A stretch of 64,000 nt of DNA, from contig NW_003314284.1 of assembly GCF_000143415.4 (NCBI RefSeq), positions 1,346,693-1,410,692 on the forward strand, in the 5' to 3' direction. The position numbers were made by a program, and so were the translations under genes. Positions 17,401 through 29,565 of this stretch are shown in pieces. The stretch comes from Selaginella moellendorffii. Lineage: Eukaryota; Plantae; Lycopodiophyta. How positions within the stretch are numbered: the first letter of the stretch is position 1; each line of letters begins with the position of its first letter. The notes beneath the pieces are model-generated. The model was not told where the DNA came from, ran no database searches, and was given only the letters and a program-made list of their open reading frames with translations.

Positions 17401-19000
17401 AAGAGATGTGGCTTTTTATCTTGAGTTGATATTCTAGAGTTTAGATGCAAAAGATACAATATAAATACATAAATTTCATGCAACTTGGGTAAGGAGTTTA
17501 TTTCTTGCAGTGGTTCTGATTTTTTTGCATAGAAGAATGCTCTTGATAAATGAATATCTATATATATTTTAATGACTACGTAGTATTACATCTATATATA
17601 TTTGCAGTGTATTGCAATTACATATGAAAGCACATATATAAGCTTCTATACATAAGACCTATAGTGTTTATGCAAAATTCACACAATAAGAAGCCTTAAT
17701 TTTGTAAAAATTCTCTTCAAATTAAGTGGATTTGAGGTGAAAGAATTTTTAAGGCATATAATCTAGAATTTTAGTATAGTTTATAAGATTTTGGGTTTCC
17801 CACAATTAATTTATAAAAAGTAGCTGCCACAAATTATTGCTTCTAGTTTTAAGATTTTGTAACATGATTTATTATACAAGACATTCAATTAGTTGCAGGA
17901 TTTGTAACAACTTTATACTTTATTCCTTAATCTTGCATTTAAATGTGTTTTCCCCTCAAGAGCATAAAAAATGGGAAGGATAAGGCACCTTGTATTATAT
18001 GGTAAAATATTTAAGATCTCTTTGTTAAACTCTTGAACAAGATTACAAACAATAGCAATTTATAAGTAAATGCTTGTATGAATGTATAGATACTTTATTG
18101 CTTTATTGTTTTTTTGGTCGAAAGGATTCATTGAGCTCGGCTTTCTTGAACAGATATATTAGTTTGGTTATACTATCTCACTCTATGAATGAATCGTCAA
18201 TTGATATATCAAGTTAAAATATGCCACATTACTGTAATTTATATTTATATGCCTATTATTAATATTTATTTTTTATTTTTGTCTTTGGAGTGAGATGTTT
18301 CAAGAAAATAACAAAACTATAAATCTATTTTAAAAATATTTAAGATTAGTATCTTAACTAATAAATTTTAAGCTGAAATAAATAAAATCTATGCAATAAG
18401 TCAAAATAACTAGAATATATTATTATTTAATATTGTACAACTCATGTATTCTTCTTTTATTACTTATTAATCATGTTAACAAAATATTTAATTTTATATT
18501 GCTCTTTTTAATTTATGAATATTTAGAATACTTTTATATAAGAGTATATAATCCTTTTTAAAATCACTAATTTACATTTGTCACTAATTTACATTGGACA
18601 CAATTATCATGTAAATCATGTAATACAAACAAGCATTTTCAAAGGTTCTTCACCATATTTTTTTTTAAAAACCTAATCTCATGAATATTCCTAGATTGGC
18701 CATGAGATTGGTTATTTTTAAAATCCTCTTGCTAATGAAGGCATAATTTATTTTATAAAACATTCTTTATAGATAATTTAAAATTTTAGATTGTTTTTAA
18801 CAAATAGCATATTATAAAACTTATAACTTCTTAAAATGTTTTATTTTAAAAAATAATTATATATAAAAATTGATAATTAGAAATCAATATTTTAAAGTTC
18901 TAGACTCAATTTTATAGAAGTTTTATATAAAACTAAATATCTTTTTTGAAGATACAGAAAATATTCTGAAGTGCATAACCGACCGTTTTGAATTTTATTT
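14410..19000. repeat. AT-rich, CpG-poor region of probable degraded transposon debris
   Basis: Very high AT, no intact ORFs, decayed coding-like repeats (EVEV/P units at ~16830-17090), imperfect inverted repeat at ~18663-18723; family not identifiable. Confidence 0.45.
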
Positions 19001-19009
19001 CTAGGGCTC

Positions 19010-22000
19010 ATGGAGCATGGATCATCGCGCAAGTCCTCGGTGGTGAGGCCCTTCTCGCTCCAGCTGTCGGCGTCGCTGGTCGAGGATCTCTACGCGCCGA
19101 TCGCCATGCCGCACCCGATGAGCAGCTCTTCTAGCTCTCAGGAACAGGAAGAATCGCCTCCATCGCCGGTTGATGAGTCGGCGCCACGGGCGAGGAGCCC
19201 GGAGGAAAATGCTGGCCCGGGATTTTGTCCAATGTGTGCCACAAGGCGTTCCTTTGGTGATGTCAGCCATGAATCTCCATCCACTTCCAAGGAGAAATCC
19301 CCTCCCTGGACTCTAGTAAGTTCCCTTTTTCTACCGTGGAGGGATCTTACGTTCCATTCAGGTTCTTCGCTTCAAAGCCATCAGTGTTACGATGGATCAC
19401 ACCGAAGTTGGTCCGGGCTATGATACCTTTGGCAAGAAGCTACTTGGATGCCTTCTAGGAGTTTGCATTAAGCTGGCTCGTTCCAAGAAGAAATCCAGCA
19501 AGATCAAGGTTCTCAAGGACGTGAGTGGCTATGTGATGCCGGGTTCCATGACTCTTGTTCTCGGTCCGCCAGGTTCGTGACCTTGATTTTTGTTTCTTTT
19601 GAGACCTTTTCCTTCTAAACAGGCAGTGGGAAGAGCACTCTCCTCAAGGTAGCATGGTGATTGTTTGGAGATATGAAATGCTTTGTTTCATATGCTACAT
19701 TGGCTGTTAATTCTACAGACAGTGGTGATAACAGGTGATGGGAGGAAAGCTACGTCCTAACAGACGACTCAGGCTGGAGGGCGTTGTGCTTTACAACAAC
19801 GACCCTTTGTCGCCCAGACTTGCTATAAAGCGGCCCATCGCTTATGTGACTCAACACGACAACGTGTAAGTAGGCTCGTTGATGTTTCTCAGCCGTATAA
19901 ACTGGCCTACACTTGCAGGCATTTGCCGTTTTTCACAGTCCGAGAAACTATCGAGTTTGTTCAACGGTGTGCTCTATGGCAGCGTTGTATGCCACAGTCC
20001 GATGCTGTACAGGGCCGGGACTCGTACGTGGACTACATCCTACACATGTTTGGTCTCAAAAAGATTGAAAACGAACGGGTTGGGACTCTTGCTGATGGCA
20101 TCAAGGATAGCGACCGAAACAGACTGGCAACTGCGGAGATTGCTATGGGTACATACTCTGTGTTGCTGTATGATCAGACAAGTTCTGGACAGGACTCGCT
20201 TATCACGTATGACTTGCTTCAAATGCTGCAAAGCGTGGTTCACGTACAGCATTGTGCTGCCGTCATATCGCTGGTTCAGATTTCACCGGAATCCTTCGAT
20301 CTTTTCGACCGTGTTATCCTTCTCAGCGAGGGTGAGGTTCTCTATCAAGGCCCGCGTGAATGCGTCGAGAGCTACTTCTTAAAGCTTGGGTATGTGTTTG
20401 GCACACTTTGTTCTTCGTTTTATTTTTGCCTGGCAGGTTCAAGAAGCCCGCTCACGTAGACTCTGGAACATTTTTACAGGATATTGCAGCTGGCGAGGGT
20501 GGACAGTATTCACAGCAGCCTTCATCGCTTAGTATTGAGGAGCTTATAAAGTTCTATAAAGGATCGGACTACTATAAAGACGTTTTTCGGCTTGTTTCAA
20601 CTGAAAAGGCGACTCAAGCAACCTTATTCAGAACTTCTAGCATTCGTGCTTCGCTGCAAGGGAATGGTATGGAAAAGAATATGTGTTCTTTTGCTACTAA
20701 AATGCAGTGAGCCGTGCAGATGTGTTGGTGACGGAAGCTCCGAGTGTAGAAAGTTGTGCTTGCGTTCGTGTTGGCGACAAGGTGACAGGAGTTTGCGTGC
20801 GTAGTGAAGAATTTCAATATGTTGAGAGCTCGGATTCAGCTTCGAAAGTATCCAACATGTTGAAGGCATCGTATAGCTCCATCCTTTTACAGTTGGAGCG
20901 AAATCTCGATGAGGTTGGGCATCTCGTAATTTGAAAGTCCCTTTATGTCTTTAGTTTGCAGGGAGGCAATGCTATGTATTATCAAAGACACTTCGGATGG
21001 CAACAATTTTGTTCGTGGTGGTTGTCGACCTGGTGTTTGATCCGGCGTCAAACAATATTTGTAATGCGACTTAAGGGATTAGCTATTGTACGACTTCTCC
21101 AGGTAATGACAGCGTCCGATTTAGTCATGCTAAATGCTGACTCTTCAGATTCTTTTAGTCGGCTTGTTCACTGGCTCCTTGTTCTATCATAAAGGAGGCA
21201 GACTTGATCAATACGAAATGAATTCTATGAGAACGATTGGATTTATATCTATGATGACTTTGATGTTAATTAACATCGTCCAGCTTCCGGTCCATATGGT
21301 GTTTCATCGACCCGTTTTCTACAAGCAGCAAGGTCAACACTTATTTCCTGTTTCTTCGTATGTAGTAGCACATGCCATTTTGAACATTCCTCAATCAGTT
21401 ACAGAGGTATGCTATTATTTTCTCGTATGACTTGAGCGTTGAAAGTATTACAGGCACTGCTTTACAGTTTGTGCGTGTATTTTTTAGCTTCGCTGTCTAA
21501 AGAGAAGGCAGCACATTATGTTCAGTACTTAGGATTGATTTTTGTCACTGCTTATTTGGGCTCACTTTGGATGTTGTTGGTAGGTGCCATTGCACCAATG
21601 CTGGAAGTAGCCACAACGATGGGAGGTATGACTTTTTCTGAGATAATGTAGCTTCAGCAACATGTCTACTTGTTTTTACAGGTTCATTTGTCGCTTTGAA
21701 CCTTCTATTTTCGGGCTCCACGATTATTCCAAGTGTAATCAGCTGGTACTGGCGATGGGTTCTATACATTACACCAACTCGTTGGGGAAATGTCATTTTT
21801 ACATCGACTCAAACCGACAACCGCTATGAATTACCTTGCACACTTTACCGCACGTATCCATTCTGTCTTCTTCATCCAACACTTTCTCTTGGCCAAGCAT
21901 TTCTCAAGTATTATGAGCTACAAGCTGGTGGAAAAAGGCTTGTTCTCGCATTCGGAGTCATCGTTGCATATATTCTGGTTCTCATTTATTTGGCATATCT

Positions 22001-24041
22001 TGCGTACAGCAAAGTCCGGATACAAGAAACGGCATCGGCTATACCAAGGCAGAAACAGTATGTTCGCGGCCCCAACAATGTGGAACAAGCAGAGAACGGA
22101 GGTACACGAGCACCTGGGAGGTGGACTTGCAAGTTATCTGTCAAGCCTGTAACGCTCTCCTTTCACCAGCTGAGGTTCACCAGGCGGGACGCGCGATCTT
22201 CTTTTGAGCAAGTAGTATTGGACAACGTCTCTGGCTATGCCAAGCCAGGAACAATGCTAGCAATTGCTGGGGGCACACGGTCGGGCAAGGCAACGTTACT
22301 CAACTGCATTGCAGGCAGGCTACCACCCGGCAAGCTCGAGGGTGACGTTTCTTTAAACGGTTTGAAACTGGACAGACTCGCCATCTGCCGGATATCTGGA
22401 TTTGCTGAGAAGTTGGAAGCTCACCAACAGTATCTTACTGTCAGAGAGTCCCTGGAGTTCAGTGCAAATCTCAGGCTGGGAAAACAAATCAGTGCGGACG
22501 ACAAAGCTCGGCATGTGACGGAGGTCCTGGAACTTTTGGGATTGTCAGCTATGAGCAATCAACTTGTTGGCAACTTGAAGCTCGTCACTGCTCGAATCCA
22601 GGAGACAAGAAGGAAACTTACTATAGCTGTGGAACTCGCCGTCAACCCCGGCATACTTTTCTTGGAGGATCCCACGGCGCAGCTGGATGGCACTAGCTCC
22701 AGAGAGATTCTGAGACTGCTCCAGAGTGTTGCTTTAAGCGGGCGTACTATCATCAGCATGCTGGATCATCCCAGTGGAGAGGCACTCAGCGTGTTCAACG
22801 ATGTGTTGGTACTAGCTATTGGCGGTCACACAGCCTATTTCGGCGCCGTTGGCTGGAACTGCAAGCAAGTGCTGCACTACTTCACGTCAGTGCCGAGTTC
22901 GCCACCTTACAACGAGCAGTGGAACCCTGTCACCTACATCCTCGAAGCACTTGGCGGAGGCATAAAGGAGCGAAAACCATTGCACGACTTCTCTCAGCTG
23001 TACCAGTCCAGCCCTCTACATCAGGCAAACGCGGAGGTACTCGAGAGGCTTCTCAAGCAGCAGCCAGATCCCGAGCTCAAGAACATCAGCTCTCGATACG
23101 CAGCTTCGTTCAAGACGCAGGCAGCCATGGTGTTCCTCCGGAACCAGCGTTTCTTATGGAGGAACGTGACATACACACTCCGCCGCCTCCTTGGGACCAT
23201 TCTCGTCGCTCTCGTCATGGGAACACTCTACCTCAACATCTCCGTGGAAAAGCTGCTGTTCATGACGTCCGCCAGCCTCTTCCCGTATATCCAGCTGATT
23301 ATGATCTCCGGGCTCACGGCCAACAACGTTATACCGCAGCTCGGAACGGACAGGCTCGTCTACTATCGAGAGAACCGAGCAAGGATGTACTCCCCGATGC
23401 TGTATCCGCTGTCCTGGGCCATCGCCGAGGTTCCATACTTGCTGCTCGGCACACTCGCCTTCGTCGGGATTGGAAACGGCCTGGCCAACCTTGCCGTCGA
23501 CTCCGTGTCCGCGTTCGTCCAGTACTGGATCGGCCTGTTTCTCTTCACCCTGGCCGTGACTTACTTCGGCATCTTCGTCACGCTGCTGTTTCCAAACTCG
23601 CTGCTGGCCATGACGGTCTCGTCGATATCGACTTCGGTGTGGGTGGCGTCCTCGGGGGTCTCCATTCCGCGCTACAACATCCAGTTTTACAAGTGGCTCT
23701 ACTGGATCAACCCGTATCAGTACGCCGTCAATATCCTCACCACGACTGCGTTCTACTGCGACACCGGAACTCCGGCGTGCAATGCTTGCACGATCGGCGC
23801 GAGTTGCCCTGGATGCAAGTGCAAGAGGCTGGTCGACTTGGAGAAGAAGCTGGTGCAAATCTATGGGCCGGTCTTCAGCCAGTTCATTCGAGCAAGCTTC
23901 GTGTGGGAGAGGCTGAGCAAGGCAAGAGTTCTTGAGAAGCACAGGATTGGGAAGGACTTCCTGGCTCTGGCTTTCATGGTGCTGCTCTTCGCGGTCCTGG
24001 CGATCGTATCCTTCGCTCGACTCAAGCACAACAGGAAGTAA
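19010..24041 (+). CDS. Full-size ABCG/PDR-like transporter, copy 1 (NBD1-PDZ-like-TMD1-NBD2-TMD2), degenerate ATPase motifs
   Basis: [118 protein letters not shown]; introns in 5' half, single ~2.36-kb terminal exon. Confidence 0.9.
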
Positions 24042-24530: not shown

Positions 24531-27500
24531 ATGGCTGCCACCGCGGATGATGGCGCCGATGATCGCCGCCACGAAATGGAGGCCGCGAGAGTCTCCAATT
24601 CCTCGTCCCTCCGCGAGCTCGTCGTCGATGAGGAGCTGCCAAGGGCTGTGAGCCTCAGCATTGCGAGATCGAGCTCGCTCAAGAGCGATCTGGAGCAGTA
24701 CCACGCTGCGACGGATCCATATGACCTGGTACCAGATATTTAAAATTTTCCTTGTTCTTTTCTTTCTGTCCGGGAAGATCTTTACCAGGCGAGCGTTTGC
24801 AGGTGATAAGATTCAAGGGTGTCACTGTGACCGTGAACAGTCCTCAGCAGCAAGCGCAGAGCTATGAAACGTTTGGAAGGAAGATTGTGGGCTGCTTTCT
24901 CGGTCCTCTAAAGCTTCTCGCGAAGAAAAGAGATCAACCGAGCAGTGTCAAGGTACTTGACGACGTGAGTGGCTACGTTATGCCTGGCTCCATGACTCTA
25001 GTGATCGGTCCGGCAGGTAATTCTCCAAAACTTAACGAACTCTAGCTACATTTTCACGGTTTTTTTCTTTTTTTTCTTTGTTCTAGGAAGTGGAAAGACT
25101 GCTCTTTTGAAGGTAATTTAGTGGTTTCTTATTACAATGTGACTTATCCATCTTTCTGTGATTATACCAGGTCCTTGCCGGACACTTTCATCCCAGCAAG
25201 CTCGTAAAGTTTGAAGGCCAGGTCTTATACAACGACTCCGTATTGACGCCAGATCTCGAGACCAAGCGTCCGATTGCTTATGCTACAGGCCTTCACAACG
25301 TGTACGTAATCTTTGTTTTGTTTTCTTCTTGTCTGAACTCCATTTAATGCTTTTTATCAGCCACTTGCCGGTGCTTACCATTCGAGAAACTCTCGAGTTT
25401 GCCGAGAAATGCACGCGACGGCTTCGACCGCAGGAACTCACGGCCCAAATGATCAGGTGCTTTGCTCCGGACTTGGCAGACAGCGACAATCCATTCCTGG
25501 AATATGTTCTACAGACTTTCGGCTTAAAGCAAATCGAGCATTTGGTGGTCGGGCCTCTCCTGAAGGAATCAGCGAAAGCCAGGCTTACGACAGCAGAGAT
25601 CGCGATGCGGACTTTTTCAGTCTTTCTATACGATCAGCCAGCAACGGCAGAGGACTCGTTACGCCTTTATGACAGGCTTCATAATCTCTTAGACACAGTG
25701 ATTCGTGTTCAAGAATGCGCTCTAGTAACTTGCATGGCTCAGGTAGCTCCGGAAGTTTTCGAGCTTTTTGACAGGATCATTATCTTGTCCGAGGGCCAGA
25801 TGATCTACCAAGGTCCTCGACACAGTGTGGAAAACTACTTCTTCAAGCTTGGGTATGTCTAAACTCTCTTATCTGCTGACGAACTAACTTCCTTGTTGCC
25901 TGCCAGATATAAAAAACCTAGCTATGTCGATCCTGCTGTGTTCCTTCAAGATATTTCTGCGGGGTCTGGAGCTGGATACCTGATGCCTGGTTTTACAAAA
26001 CTGGGAATTCCGGAGCTTGTTGTATCTTATAAAGCATCCGACCATTTCAAAGACGTCACGCGTATCGTTTCCAGCAAAGACGTGACTCACACTTACATGG
26101 CCGAGACTATCTCCGATATTGAGATCTCCATCCAGCATGACACTCTGAATGGCCCGGGTAACGATACGTGTTCCTCTTTAGTGTCGAATTATAAGGTTTT
26201 GTAGGTGTTTACGTGACAAATGTCTCCGAGGCCGGAGAGATCATAACCAATGGAGCGGTTCGAGTGGGAGACGAAATCACTGCTGTTGTGCTGCCTGACG
26301 GTAGTACTCACTACGTTAGAGGTGGCTCTCCAGCCGAACAGGCGGCTCAAGCTTGTAAAGTTGCCGACTTGCTAAACTCGAGAGAAGGATCACTTCACGT
26401 GCAACTGGAGCGTAAAATGCAAGAGGTGAGAACTCATACCAAATCTTCAGATGTTAATGGTAATCTCATGGAGTTTTCCTGTCCAGAAAGAAACCGGTGC
26501 GTGCTACAAAAAGCGGTTTGGATTTGTCAACGTGAAGGACTGGCTATGGTCTACGCAATGCCTTGTGAAGCGTCAATTTACATTTGCGATTCGTTTCAAA
26601 ATCCTGATCATACTTCGGCTGTTCCAGGTTTGAAAAGCTCTAGACTTTTTCTTAGCTTTCAACAATCGTATTCGTACAGATTACTGTTCTTGGACTCTTT
26701 GCTGGTTCTTTCTTCTACAAGAAAGGCGGCAAGATCGATCAATATGAGATGATTGCGCTACGAACCCTTGGCTTCGTCTCGATGATGGTCTTGATGCTTA
26801 TAAACCTCACACAACTCCCAATCCACCTCTTGATTCATCGGCCGGTTTTCCAAAAGCACCGCGAGCTGCATTTCTTCCCAGTTTCTTCATACGTCGTGGC
26901 TCAAGGCCTCGTGAGTCTCCCGCAATCACTTCTCGAGGTAAGAGTCGCTTGATTGTCGGAAGCTTCACACATACATGGTCATTCTCTTGAGCAGGCAATA
27001 ATCTATAGCATGTGTACGTACTTCCTCGCGGGCCTCTCACTGGAAAATGCTGCGCACTACTTCCAGTATTTGGCGCTGATCTTTGTGATAGGATACATGG
27101 GATCGTCGTTCGTGTTTCTCGTCGGCGGATTCGCTCCGCTGCTGGAGAATGCCGCAGCTTTGGCAGGTTTGAAACACCTTTTGACAAAACATTGGGTTTA
27201 TTTTCTTTCATCCACAGGACTTTTCATCCTCGTGTGTCTTCTCTTCTCTGGCGTGATTTTGCTACCCAGTGTGACACCCGCTTACTGGAAATGGATGCTC
27301 TACATCGTTCCAACGCGCTGGGGCAACATCATCTACTCCTCGACTCAGATGAAGACCCGGTACGACCAGCCATGCACGAGCCATCTCAACTTCCAGTTCT
27401 GTTTGGTAAACCCAAGGCTCACGCTCGGCCGGGCCTTTATCAAGTTCTATGACTTGGAAGCCTCCGGGGGAAGGCTGGTGCTCGCGTACGCAGCAATCGT

Positions 27501-29565
27501 CATCTTCATCCTCGCTCTCAACTTCCTCGCATACCTGGCGTACAAAAAGTCCCGCTTGCCGGAGCTGGCGCCATCTCCTGTCAGGAAAGGTCAGCTTCAT
27601 CCAGTTGCCGACGAAGAAGCTGTAAAACCAGATCCGGAGGAGCTGAGCAGAGTAGAGGACGGTAGCCTCCGCGACGGTCCCGGTCAAGAAGAAGCAGCCA
27701 AGTGGATGGAACTCCATCTTCCTGTGAGGCCTCTAGTTCTCACGTTCTTCGACATCACTCTTCCGACAGGGCACCTGAGCCTGATCTCCGGCTATGTCAA
27801 GCCAGGCCAGATGCTAGCTCTCGTCGGAAGCACTCGCGCAGGAAAGTCGACACTCCTCAAGTGCCTGGCCGGCAGGATGCCCTCGGAAGGCGAGGTACTC
27901 GTCAATGGTGTCCGGCTGAAGAAGACGTGCTTCCACCGCATCTCTGGCTTTGCCGAGAACGTCGAGATGCACCAGCCGTATCTCACAGTCCGAGAGTCTC
28001 TCGAGTTCAGCGCCAACCTCCGGCTCAGGCGTCACATAAGCTCCGCCGACAAGGCTCGTCACGTCGATCTCATACTCGAGCTCACAGGCCTCTCCCACGT
28101 AAGCAACAAGCTAGTCGGGGTGTTCCAGCAGATGAACAAGCGACCGCGGGAGATCACCAAGAAGCTCACCATAGCCATCGAGCTGGCAGCAAATCCCAGC
28201 ATCCTGTTTCTCGACGATCCAACTTCGCAGCTGGACGGAGCCAGCGCGAGAAACGTTCTGCACCTCTTGCAAACGGTGGCCATGAACGGACGCACGCTGC
28301 TCGTCACCTTGCACCATCCCAGCGCCGAGACACTAGGCCTCTTCCACAGCGTGCTGGTCTTGCGGGAGGGGAAGCAAGTCTACTTCGGACCACCCGGTAC
28401 CAACGGCAGCCAGCTCCTCGACTATTTCACGGCCATTCCAGGCGTGCCACCTTACGACCCGCGGCGGAGCCCGATGGTGTTCCTGCTGGACATCCTGGGT
28501 GGCGGAACCACGAAGCGGGAGCCCGCGGCGGACTTCGTCTCCGCATATCATAACAGCCCACTGCAGCTCGCAAACGCGGCCGAGCTCCAGTCCCTGCGTG
28601 ACCAGAAAGACGACGGCCTCCACCATCTCAACTCCCGCTACATCGCCCCCTACAAGACGCAGTTCGCTATGGTGTTCCTCCGCAACGCCAGGTTCCTGTG
28701 GCGCAACGTCCGCTACACTTTCAACCGGCTCACGGGCATTGTCATCATCGCGCTCGTCATCGGCACACTCTTCCTCAACATCGACGTCGAGCGGTCCACC
28801 TCCATGCAGTCGGCGTCGCTCATCATGTACATCGAGGCCATCCTCATCTGCGCCACCACCGCCAACAATCTCATCCCGCAGCTCGGCACCGACAGGCAGG
28901 TCTACGTCCGCGAGAGCCGAGCTCGCATGTACACCTCGCTGCTCTACCCGCTGTCCTGGCTCGTCTCGGAGATCCCATACATCCTCCTGGGAACGTTCGT
29001 CTTCGTCGGGATAGCAAACGGGATGGCCGGCGTCGGAGTCGACACCTTCACGATGTTCCTCAAGTACTGGACGTGCCTCTTCCTCTTCACCATGGTGGTG
29101 GTGTGCTACGGCGTCTTCCTGGCCTGCGCAGCTCCGATCCCGACCATAGCCGTCACCTTCTCCTCCATCATCATGTCCATGTGGATCTCCTCGTCCGGCG
29201 TCTCGGTTCCCAGGAACAGGATCCGCTTCTACAAGTGGCTCTACTGGATGAACCCGTTCCAGTACACGATCAACATCCTCACCCCGACCTCCTTCTACTG
29301 CGACACTGGGACCCCGGCCTGCTTGAGCTGCGTCATCCGCCAGCCGTGCCCCGGCTGCCACTGCAAGAGGCTTCACGACGTCGAGCAGCTCCTGACCCGG
29401 ACCAACACCACCCGGCCTGCGTTCGTGTGGGATAGACTGCTGGCTACCAGACCCATCGAGATGAGCCGCAACCACTGGGACTATCTGGCGCTGTGTGGGA
29501 TGGCGCTCTTCTTCGCGGCGCTGGCGGTCACGTCTTTCAAGTTTCTCAAACACAACAGAGCTTGA
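24531..29565 (+). CDS. Full-size ABCG/PDR-like transporter, copy 2 (tandem paralog with same architecture)
   Basis: [101 protein letters not shown]; intron positions match copy 1. Confidence 0.9.

What the first reader, a model, noticed from the sequence alone, without database searches (positions are those of the whole stretch)
26085..26413. PDZ domain built into a full-size ABCG transporter (clearest in copy 2)
Seen: the spliced sequence between NBD1 and TMD1 is THTYMAETISDIEISIQHDTLNGP-GVYVTNVSEAGEIITNGAVRVGDEITAVVLPDGSTHYVRGGSPAEQAAQACKVADLLNSREGSLHVQLER. Known: PDZ consensus is G-I-F-V-x-x-V...G-x-L-x-x-G-D-x-I-x-x-V...helix(V-x-x-L-L)...V-x-L-x-x-x-R, which this follows element by element, though the GLGF loop is atypical (SDIEI). 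ABC transporters usually bind PDZ scaffolds via C-terminal tails; I know of no characterised PDR/ABCG with its own PDZ domain. Inference: together with dead-looking ATPase sites and a Cys-rich outer loop, this may be an undescribed class of ABC-derived sensor or scaffold that couples a membrane signal to a cytosolic partner.
Basis: partly seen in the sequence, partly recalled or inferred. Interest (0 to 1): 0.88.

Follow-up and report, generated by a model that had tools for sequence, protein, structure and literature searches.

The report
PDZ domain inside plant ABCG transporter
A Selaginella membrane-transporter gene carries a built-in PDZ protein-binding domain, and the same insert marks an old, unstudied green-plant branch of ABCG transporters that was not found in the model-plant families checked (Arabidopsis's, the legumes, the tomato family, cultivated rice).

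Summary
Confirmed. The window is Selaginella moellendorffii. The segment lies in exons 6-7 of a transcribed, correctly spliced full-size ABCG gene (RefSeq XP_024534527.1, window 24531-29565), the second of a tandem pair.

The ~100-aa insert between NBD1 and the helix before TM1 folds as a canonical-order PDZ domain. AF2 pLDDT is 73 alone and mostly 82-94 in context. All top-50 hits in Foldseek, and in a Foldseek-independent scan of 48,161 PDB chains, are PDZ domains (Z 9.8-7.7). Sequence evidence agrees but is sub-threshold (Pfam PDZ 16.8 vs 23.2 bits), and no clade member carries a precomputed Pfam PDZ.

The insert marks one clade (SH-aLRT 100): Cymbomonas, Chlorokybus, Zygnematophyceae, liverworts, lycophytes, a fern, Amborella and scattered angiosperms. 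It is absent from canonical PDRs and was not found in Brassicaceae, legumes, Solanaceae or Oryza sativa. The clade very probably equals the 'V1-type' ABCGs of Cho et al. 2020, who mention no PDZ. No paper found describes one.

Algal and liverwort members keep canonical ATPase motifs; vascular-plant members have lost them. The PDZ therefore predates the 'dead' sites. This copy has I-E-I where PDZ domains have the Φ-G-Φ carboxylate loop, so classical peptide binding is doubtful here. A regulatory or scaffolding role in cis is inferred, not tested.

The parts
24531..29565 (+). ABCG copy 2: full-size (NBD-TMD)x2 ABCG gene with 11 exons, encoding 1483 aa (P0149 = XP_024534527.1).
   Evidence: P0149 maps exactly to exons 24531-24728, 24803-25016, 25087-25112, 25171-25301, 25361-25852, 25907-26157, 26205-26425, 26487-26627, 26680-26937, 26995-27166 and 27218-29562, plus the stop. 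All introns are confirmed by RNA contigs. Pfam finds ABC_tran x2 and ABC2_membrane x2.
25907..26157 (+). Exon 6: the end of NBD1, a conserved pre-PDZ helix region (ELVVSYKASDHFKDV.RIV), and PDZ strands betaA-betaB.
   Evidence: Secondary structure of the in-context model: E414-421 and E425-432.
26158..26204 (+). 47-nt GT..AG intron inside the PDZ-coding region (phase 1, splits Gly438).
   Evidence: Sequence. The 'skips 47' joint is present in all four RNA runs.
26205..26425 (+). Exon 7: PDZ strands betaC, betaD and betaE, helix alphaB, strand betaF, and the start of the acidic linker to the elbow helix.
   Evidence: Model elements: E436-444, E461-466, E472-474, H480-496, E501-508.
26079..26416 (+). 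PDZ domain proper, residues ~412-508 (intron 26158-26204 excluded). It is inserted between NBD1 and the helix preceding TM1.
   Evidence: AF2 models. Foldseek and VIA hits are all PDZ, with Z up to 9.8. The insert is absent from canonical PDR, oomycete and fungal ABCGs.
26109..26126 (+). Position of the carboxylate-binding (GLGF) loop and the start of betaB. It reads I-S-D-I-E-I here, so the conserved Gly is replaced by Glu.
   Evidence: Alignments A1 and A2 and the family alignment. Angiosperms have PGLGLSL, liverworts KPLGLKL, and Selaginella paralog 3 has PSIGLSV.
25545..25658 (+). NBD1 signature, Walker B and D-loop region (residues 252-289). The signature is lost (LLKESAKARL instead of VSGGERHRV). 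Walker B reads LYDQP, so the catalytic Glu is Gln.
   Evidence: Motif alignment.
28111..28239 (+). NBD2 signature, Walker B and D-loop region (residues 1000-1042). The signature is lost (NKRPREITKKL instead of GLSVEQAKRL). Walker B reads LFLDDP, so the catalytic Glu is Asp.
   Evidence: Motif alignment.
19359..24041 (+). ABCG copy 1, the tandem paralog (about 52-54% identical). It carries a shorter, more degenerate PDZ-like insert at about 20610-20913.
   Evidence: tblastn. It is sister to copy 2 in the tree with support 100.

Best explanation
The segment encodes a real PDZ-fold domain of the canonical eukaryotic strand order (betaA-betaB-betaC-[alphaA loop]-betaD-betaE-alphaB-betaF). It is inserted in the cytosolic linker between the end of NBD1 and the helix that leads into TM1 of a full-size ABCG/PDR-type protein. 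SHOWN: the gene is transcribed and spliced as read. The fold is PDZ. The insert sits at the same site in one monophyletic, ancient green-plant ABCG clade and in no other ABCG examined. Early-branching members combine it with canonical ATPase motifs, while vascular-plant members, this gene included, have lost both signature motifs and altered both Walker B motifs. INFERRED: the PDZ began as a built-in cytosolic interaction or regulatory module of an active exporter. That would be an in-cis version of the PDZ-scaffold contacts that animal ABC transporters make through their C-terminal tails, placed where it can influence how NBD1 couples to TMD1. In vascular plants the protein has probably stopped being a conventional ATP-hydrolysing pump, and the PDZ was kept. 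In this Selaginella copy the Phi-G-Phi loop is I-E-I. Here the domain more likely works through an internal or non-carboxylate contact, or as an allosteric or structural element, than by classical C-terminal peptide capture.
For: Gene and splicing.
Fold: the isolated model has pLDDT 72.9 and pTM 0.66. In the 770-aa N-half model (pLDDT 84, pTM 0.80) the domain scores 82-94, apart from the betaC-betaD loop at 70-78. The Foldseek PDB top 50 are all PDZ at probability 1.00. VIA-align gives Z 9.0-9.8 with rmsd 2.3-3.7 A over 83-94 residues. A scan of 48,161 PDB representatives that does not use Foldseek returns 50 of 50 PDZ domains, Z 9.8 falling to 7.7; the tool's stated background at rank 50 is 4-5.
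Sequence: Pfam PDZ, PDZ_2 or PDZ_6 is the top hit for five family segments, four of them with no other hit, all sub-threshold. PDB profile hits are Scribble, PSD-95 and Dlg PDZ domains. hhalign against a true PDZ gives 77.7% probability and E 1.9e-5. The family profile finds the three PDZ domains of P0142. Protein-language-model neighbours are mostly PDZ clusters.
Clade: the insert is at the same site in Marchantia, Riccia, Calypogeia, Spirogloea, Closterium, Chlorokybus, Cymbomonas, lycophytes, Adiantum, Amborella and angiosperms, and is absent in canonical PDR, oomycete and fungal proteins. In a tree built without the insert columns, all bearers form one clade with SH-aLRT 100.
Motifs.
The PDZ has been kept since before the split of streptophyte algae from land plants. 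Between distant members it is the least conserved domain, but identity remains 45-66% between vascular-plant members.
Against: No sequence model reaches its curated threshold (16.8 vs 23.2 bits). The PDZ call therefore rests mainly on predicted structures. The isolated model came from only 14 sequences. About 27 of the 92 rows in the in-context alignment carry the insert.
I could not read model coordinates or PAE, so how the PDZ docks and whether its groove is open are unknown.
No ligand is known. The protein's own C-terminus ends in basic residues (KHNRA, FDKR), as in PDZ-less PDRs, so it is not an obvious ligand.
In this copy the key loop Gly is Glu, and in copy 1 the loop reads SIRA.
The same profile search also scored a NACHT-LRR protein (P0140) at E 4e-6. 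That hit is repeat-driven and false; it disappears with the broader profile. Summed E-values from that search need care.
Confidence: 0.6

Rival explanations
1. The fold is PDZ but the domain is a passive structural linker. It would brace NBD1 against the TMD1 elbow helix, much as the linker domain of yeast Pdr5 packs against the NBDs, and would bind no ligand.
For: Between distant members the PDZ is the least conserved part of the protein: 35% identity between the two tandem Selaginella copies against 48-58% for the NBDs and TMDs. The Phi-G-Phi loop is lost in copy 2, copy 1 and Diphasiastrum. The high in-context pLDDT suggests a fixed position in the protein. The Pdr5 comparison comes from my own knowledge of the 7P03/7P04 structures, which are among the closest solved folds.
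Against: Most members across roughly half a billion years keep an x-Phi-G-Phi loop (PGLGL, KPLGL, PSIGL, RPLGC), the G-D motif and the alphaB helix. These are the ligand-groove elements, and a mere spacer would not need them. Canonical PDRs manage with a ~54-residue linker at this site.
Confidence: 0.25
2. The PDZ is a membrane-lipid (phosphoinositide) binding module that senses or anchors to the inner leaflet next to TM1.
For: The domain sits just before the membrane-proximal helix. From general knowledge, a minority of PDZ domains bind phosphoinositides.
Against: The domain is acidic to neutral in almost all members: net charge -8 and pI 4.8 in this copy, -9 to +1 across the family. That argues against electrostatic binding to anionic lipids.
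Confidence: 0.07
3. The segment is not a real domain: a chance PDZ-like pattern, a mis-annotated exon, or an AlphaFold artefact.
For: All sequence-model matches are below threshold. The Foldseek E-values are modest, about 3e-3.
Against: RNA contigs from four studies contain the exons with exact splicing. The insert is conserved at the same site from green algae to angiosperms. Two independent AF2 runs give the same strand and helix order. A Foldseek-independent scan returns PDZ domains only.
Confidence: 0.03

Closest known systems
Canonical eukaryotic PDZ domains (Pfam PF00595), e.g. ZO-1 PDZ1 (2H2B), GRASP/tamalin PDZ (2PNT), NHERF1 PDZ1 (1G9O), Scribble and Dlg PDZs
   Same: Same fold and same strand order. 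Z is 9.0-9.8 with 83-94 aligned residues. The G-D motif before betaD and a long alphaB are shared. Most family members keep an x-Phi-G-Phi loop.
   Different: Sequence scores are below Pfam's threshold. The betaB-betaC loop is long in angiosperm members. This copy has I-E-I instead of Phi-G-Phi. The domain is embedded in a transporter rather than a soluble scaffold.
Full-size ABCG / PDR transporters (yeast Pdr5 7P03/7P04, Candida Cdr1 9IUK, plant PDRs such as the Gossypium PDR1 and Riccia PDR rows used here)
   Same: Reverse NBD-TMD-NBD-TMD order, ABC_tran plus ABC2_membrane twice, and a type V exporter fold. The best NCBIfam model is TIGR00956, the PDR family.
   Different: It forms a separate clade from canonical plant PDRs. 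The NBD1-TMD1 linker segment (P0149 residues 405-522) is 118 aa against ~54 aa because of the PDZ. It scores 570 bits against the 1959-bit cut-off of TIGR00956. Both signature motifs are lost and both Walker B motifs altered in vascular-plant members.
'V1-type' early-diverged full-size ABCGs of Viridiplantae (Cho et al. 2020, Physiol Plant, PMC8359288)
   Same: The distribution they report (charophytes, mosses, Selaginella, and Amborella as the only angiosperm sampled) matches the clade found here.
   Different: They describe a tree branch only, with no PDZ, no motif degeneration and no function. They state that it is missing from other angiosperms, whereas one search finds it in about 40 angiosperm clusters (Vitis, Euphorbiaceae, Myrtaceae, Fagaceae, Ericales, Rubiaceae, panicoid grasses and others). 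Identity at accession level could not be checked because no supplement is held.
PDZ scaffolds acting on ABC transporters in trans (ABCG2 with PDZK1 in the urate literature; from my own knowledge NHERF1-CFTR and PDZK1-MRP2)
   Same: A PDZ domain is paired with an ABC transporter at the cytosolic face. NHERF1 PDZ1 is among the best structural matches.
   Different: There the PDZ belongs to a separate protein and binds the transporter's C-terminal tail. Here it is part of the transporter chain, and the transporter's own tail does not look like a PDZ ligand.

Membership tests
PDZ domain (Pfam clan PDZ-like; PF00595) | Fold of about 90 aa with six strands and two helices in the order betaA-betaB-betaC-alphaA-betaD-betaE-alphaB-betaF | tested here: met
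   AF2 secondary structure. Only PDZ domains appear among the top 50 in Foldseek, VIA-align and the Foldseek-independent VIA scan, with Z up to 9.8. The alphaA element is a loop, not a helix, in the models.
PDZ domain (Pfam clan PDZ-like; PF00595) | Sequence score above Pfam's gathering threshold | tested here: not met
   The best score is 16.8 bits (E 0.009) against the 23.2-bit cut-off for the Selaginella segment. Other members score 12-14 bits or nothing.
PDZ domain (Pfam clan PDZ-like; PF00595) | Carboxylate-binding loop x-Phi-G-Phi (GLGF) between betaA and betaB | tested here: not met
   This copy reads S-D-I-E-I and copy 1 reads S-I-R-A. The feature is met in most relatives: PGLGL (angiosperms), KPLGL (liverworts), PSIGL (Selaginella paralog 3), RPLGC (Chlorokybus).
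PDZ domain (Pfam clan PDZ-like; PF00595) | Binds C-terminal or internal peptide motifs in the betaB/alphaB groove | not testable with these tools
   No coordinates or PAE were accessible and no partner is known. The protein's own C-terminus is an unlikely ligand.
Full-size ABCG / PDR transporter (TIGR00956) | NBD-TMD-NBD-TMD architecture with ABC_tran and ABC2_membrane in each half | tested here: met
   Pfam hits in both halves. The fold of the N-half matches ABCG16, Pdr5, Cdr1 and ABCG2.
Full-size ABCG / PDR transporter (TIGR00956) | Score above the family model's curated cut-off; placement inside the canonical plant PDR clade | tested here: not met
   570 bits against the 1959-bit cut-off. 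The tree puts it in a separate clade from the canonical plant PDRs; both clades have support 100.
Full-size ABCG / PDR transporter (TIGR00956) | At least one consensus ATPase site: Walker A and Walker B-Glu and H-loop of NBD2, with the signature of NBD1 | tested here: not met
   The NBD1 signature is lost. NBD2 Walker A reads GSTRAGKS, Walker B LFLDDP and the H-loop LHHPS. NBD1 Walker B reads LYDQP. Algal and liverwort members of the same clade do meet this feature.
V1-type early-diverged full-size ABCG (Cho et al. 2020) | Branch outside the main plant PDR radiation, present in charophytes, bryophytes, Selaginella and Amborella | tested here: inconclusive
   The distribution and tree position match. 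Their accession list was not available.

The most novel reading that the evidence does not exclude
In vascular plants the PDZ-ABCG clade has turned from a pump into an ATP-hydrolysis-independent membrane receptor or scaffold. The conserved Cys-rich extracellular loops would sense a ligand or redox state, the transmembrane domains would relay it, and the built-in PDZ would recruit a cytosolic partner. That would make it a signalling protein class derived from an ABC transporter, overlooked because Arabidopsis, legumes, Solanaceae and cultivated rice lack it.
Probability: 0.12. Interest if true: 0.85.

Novelty: new variant of a known kind. Interest (0 to 1): 0.62.

Why it matters
[quoted passage not shown] A PDZ domain fused into the transporter chain itself appears undescribed for ABCG/PDR proteins. 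Here it is the defining feature of a whole clade reaching from green algae to flowering plants, not a one-off. The clade was not found in the model-plant families that dominate functional work, so nothing is known about what it does. It also offers a natural series: PDZ plus intact ATPase sites in Marchantia and algae, PDZ plus degenerate sites in lycophytes and angiosperms, and a degenerate PDZ loop in the Selaginella tandem pair. That series could show how a primary active transporter is remodelled into something else. Marchantia and Setaria carry family members and are tractable for genetics.

Tried and rejected
1. Own C-terminus as PDZ ligand. The tails end in K/R-rich residues (…LKHNRA, …FDKR, …NSPPQS), are not conserved at the last positions, and resemble those of PDZ-less PDRs. 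Rejected as the obvious ligand.
2. Lipid-binding PDZ. The domain is acidic. Disfavoured.
3. Sequence-only proof. Pfam, NCBIfam and PDB sequence searches stay below threshold, so the sequence evidence is only supportive.
4. The NACHT-LRR protein P0140, hit at E 4e-6 by the first family profile, has no PDZ. It was matched on LRR repeats and vanished with the broader profile. Treated as a false positive.
5. Matching the clade to Cho et al.'s V1-type by accession. No supplement is held.
6. Docking geometry of the PDZ on NBD1 and TMD1. The tools return no coordinates or PAE, so this was left open.
7. Selection test between haplotypes. I saw three amino-acid differences at residues 346-410 and none in the PDZ core between P0001 and P0149, plus one apparently silent RNA variant at 26293. 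That is too few to test.
8. Literature. Six searches combining PDZ, ABCG, PDR, plant and full-size found only animal PDZK1/ABCG2 work or unrelated papers. The 2026 Marchantia ABCG paper does not mention a PDZ.
Full report
WHAT IS THERE

The window is from Selaginella moellendorffii. An 870-aa ORF next to the finding is 97% identical to an annotated S. moellendorffii ABC transporter from the other haplotype (P0001). The RefSeq protein P0149 (XP_024534527.1, 1483 aa) is the window's own product. P0149 maps without a mismatch onto 11 exons at 24531-29562, with all introns GT..AG and 47-74 nt long.

Two tandem paralogs lie on the + strand: copy 1 at about 19359-24041 and copy 2 at 24531-29565. They are 52-54% identical.

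Thr414 starts at 26085 and Arg507 ends at 26413. A 47-nt intron (26158-26204) splits Gly438.

RNA contigs from four runs in four studies carry every one of the ten joints of the model, including 'skips 47' at 26156/26204. Single contigs run through exons 6 and 7. This answers the refutation test 'the exon is not spliced in': the exon is spliced in.

IS IT A PDZ DOMAIN?

Sequence methods point one way but weakly.
- Pfam PDZ is the top hit for the segment, at E 0.009 and 16.8 bits against a 23.2-bit cut-off.
- PDZ, PDZ_2 or PDZ_6 is the top hit for segments of Linum, Marchantia, Manihot and the third Selaginella paralog, all sub-threshold. The other segments gave nothing or a 4HBT match at E > 0.1.
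- Searches of PDB sequences with the single segment and with family profiles return Dlg, PSD-95 and Scribble PDZ domains at E 0.06-0.3.
- A family profile run with HMMER against 1.84 billion representatives found only 28 proteins. One is a metagenomic protein with a C2 domain and three bona fide PDZ domains (P0142, E 9e-5). Each of its three PDZ domains was matched, and they were matched again by a broader profile.
- A NACHT-LRR protein in the same list is a repeat-driven false positive that the broader profile drops.
- hhalign of the family alignment against one P0142 PDZ gives 77.7% probability and E 1.9e-5. The family loop p-L-G-L-s-L aligns to G-L-G-L-a-L, and V-x-V-G-D aligns to V-R-V-G-D.

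Structure prediction settles the question as far as prediction can.
- The isolated 121-aa segment, with a 14-sequence alignment, gives pLDDT 72.9 and pTM 0.66, with strands and helices in PDZ order.
- In a 770-aa model of the N-terminal half (92-sequence alignment, pLDDT 84.1, pTM 0.80), the domain has block pLDDT 82-94, except 70-78 in the betaC-betaD loop. Its elements are E414-421, E425-432, E436-444, E461-466, E472-474, H480-496 and E501-508.
- Foldseek against the PDB returns PDZ domains for all top 50 hits at probability 1.00.
- VIA-align re-scoring gives Z 9.0-9.8 and rmsd 2.3-3.7 A over 83-94 of the ~90-100 residues of ZO-1, GRASP, Par-3, Dlg and Scribble PDZs.
- A scan of 48,161 PDB cluster representatives that does not rely on Foldseek again returns 50 PDZ domains out of 50. 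Z falls from 9.8 to 7.7 at rank 50, against the tool's stated background of 4-5 at that rank. NHERF1 PDZ1 and the PDZ of plant LSF1 are among the hits.
- The alignments are sequential, so this is the canonical eukaryotic strand order, not the circularly permuted HtrA type.
- Protein-language-model neighbours are also mostly PDZ clusters.

I put the PDZ fold at about 0.9.

WHERE IT SITS AND WHO HAS IT

The domain is an insert of about 65 residues over what PDZ-less relatives have at the same place. Canonical plant PDRs and a yeast PDR have ~54-56 residues across the aligned span, and an oomycete ABCG has 32. This protein has 118 and relatives have 99-157. It follows the conserved helix ...YKASDHYKDVMRIV and precedes the acidic stretch and the W-x-S-T-K-x-L-x-x-R-Q helix that leads into TM1.

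The same insert at the same site is present in many lineages:
- the third Selaginella paralog, Diphasiastrum, the fern Adiantum, Amborella, and magnoliids;
- about 40 angiosperm clusters, including Vitis, Hevea, Manihot, Euphorbia, Myrtaceae, Fagaceae, Camellia, Actinidia, Coffea, Cinchona, Linum, Trema, Parasponia, Dioscorea and panicoid and chloridoid grasses; Oryza brachyantha carries a partial segment;
- the liverworts Marchantia, Riccia and Calypogeia;
- the Zygnematophyceae Spirogloea and Closterium, and Chlorokybus;
- the prasinophyte Cymbomonas, with only 15% identity in the insert.

Taxus (P0004) belongs to the family on its C-terminal half, but that model is truncated and its PDZ region was not seen.

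None of roughly 250 other ABCGs gathered (canonical plant PDRs, oomycete, fungal, dictyostelid, other protists) is hit by the family profile.

A maximum-likelihood tree of 43 full-length proteins excluded the insert columns automatically, because they were filled in under 60% of rows. It places all PDZ bearers, plus a truncated Physcomitrium model (P0231, in which the profile found no PDZ), in one clade with SH-aLRT 100. That clade is separate from the canonical plant PDR clade, which also has support 100. The vascular-plant members sit on a long stem of 0.96 substitutions per site.

No cluster from Brassicaceae, Fabaceae, Solanaceae, Asteraceae, Rosaceae, Oryza sativa, maize or Triticeae appeared among the 43 hits of the PDZ-targeted search. 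That search is word-based, so this is absence of detection, not proof of loss.

The distribution matches the 'V1-type' early-diverged full-size ABCGs of Cho et al. 2020: Chara, Klebsormidium, mosses, Selaginella, and Amborella as the only angiosperm sampled (PMC8359288). Their text mentions no PDZ. Their statement that other angiosperms lack the type needs amending.

THE ATPase SITES AND THE ORDER OF EVENTS

Algal and liverwort members have canonical motifs:
- NBD1 signature VSGGERHRV and Walker B LLDEIS;
- NBD2 Walker A GSSGAGKTT, signature GLSVEE/QAKRL, Walker B LFLDEPTSGLD and H-loop TIHQPS.

All vascular-plant members deviate at both composite sites:
- the NBD1 signature is lost (ISDxDRQKL; LLKESAKARL here);
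- NBD1 Walker B reads LYDQP, the natural equivalent of the E-to-Q mutations used to trap ABCG2, ABCG1 and ABCG25 with ATP, structures of which appear;
- NBD2 Walker A is irregular (GSTRAGKS here; the Lys is lost in Diphasiastrum);
- the NBD2 signature is lost;
- NBD2 Walker B reads LEEP, LEDP, LDDP or LDNP, and the H-loop has shifted.

The PDZ is therefore older than the decay of the ATPase sites and independent of it. The decay coincides with the long stem of the vascular-plant subclade.

THIS COPY COMPARED WITH THE FAMILY

Most members keep an x-Phi-G-Phi loop: PGLGL in angiosperms, KPLGL in liverworts, PSIGL in Selaginella paralog 3 and RPLGC in Chlorokybus. The window's copy 2 has S-D-I-E-I and copy 1 has S-I-R-A. 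In Diphasiastrum the loop is D-I-E-L.

Between the two tandem copies the PDZ is 35% identical, against 48-58% for the NBDs and TMDs. Among angiosperms it is 51-66% identical, and between Marchantia and Calypogeia 65%.

The tandem Selaginella pair is thus a lineage-specific, fast-evolving offshoot. The family consensus, not this copy, looks like a working peptide-binding PDZ.

HOW IT MOST LIKELY WORKS

What is shown: a PDZ fold, expressed, in the NBD1-TMD1 linker, and clade-defining.

What is inferred: it began as a cytosolic interaction or regulatory module of an active exporter. It sits at the joint through which NBD movements reach the first transmembrane helix, so a bound partner or internal segment could gate coupling or direct localisation. 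This would be the in-cis counterpart of PDZ scaffolds that bind animal ABC transporters' tails (the ABCG2/PDZK1 literature; NHERF1-CFTR from general knowledge).

In vascular plants the protein is unlikely to run a normal ATP-hydrolysis cycle. ATP binding at NBD1, whose Walker A is intact, may persist.

In this copy, with Glu in the loop, classical carboxylate capture is doubtful.

Rivals are a purely structural brace (0.25), lipid binding (0.07; the domain is acidic) and an artefact (0.03). The protein's own C-terminus is not a convincing ligand.

NOVELTY

No paper in the searchable library describes a plant, or any, ABCG/PDR with an intrinsic PDZ. No clade member carries a precomputed Pfam PDZ. 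I could not check Gene3D, SUPERFAMILY or InterPro.

I rate it a new variant of a known kind: a known transporter family with a previously undescribed integrated domain, defining a neglected clade.

LIMITS

The isolated model used a shallow alignment. Absence from model-plant families rests on a word-indexed search. The equation with the V1-type rests on distribution, not on accessions.

Noticed in passing
P0130 (NCBI KAJ7300328.1, filed under Phrynocephalus forsythii, contig 19,930 bp): A 220-aa 'lizard' protein is 91-94% identical to Selaginella ABCG copy 1 (P0155), including part of the PDZ-like insert. This looks like Selaginella-like plant DNA in a lizard genome assembly.
   Followed up: partly
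window 19359-19577 and 19622-19651: Copy 1 has 5' exons with an intact Walker A (GPPGSGKST) that are outside the RefSeq models. On this haplotype RefSeq splits copy 1 into two proteins of 488 and 890 aa.
   Followed up: partly
window 27167-27217: The 870-aa ORF 26953-29565 is not one exon. Its first 14 codons (26953-26994) are intron 9. A 51-nt in-frame intron, which would read KHLLTKHWVYFLSSTG and sits in TMD1, is removed in all RNA contigs.
   Followed up: yes
window 12000-20000: An AT-rich block (GC 0.30-0.36 against ~0.5 elsewhere) lies directly upstream of copy 1. Not analysed here.
   Followed up: no
P0149 residues ~1395-1440 (window ~29300-29435) and ~745-760: The extracellular loops before the last helix of each TMD carry conserved cysteines: FYCDTGTPACLSCVIRQPCPGCHCKRL in TMD2 and PCTSHLNFQFC in TMD1. 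A shorter Cys pattern is kept in angiosperm members. It was not analysed further.
   Followed up: no
window 29685: In all four runs the RNA contigs diverge from the genome at 29685, about 120 nt after the stop codon, and continue with the same unmatched sequence (TCTTAGTGTGTAGATT...). This could be a 3'-UTR intron or a haplotype difference.
   Followed up: no
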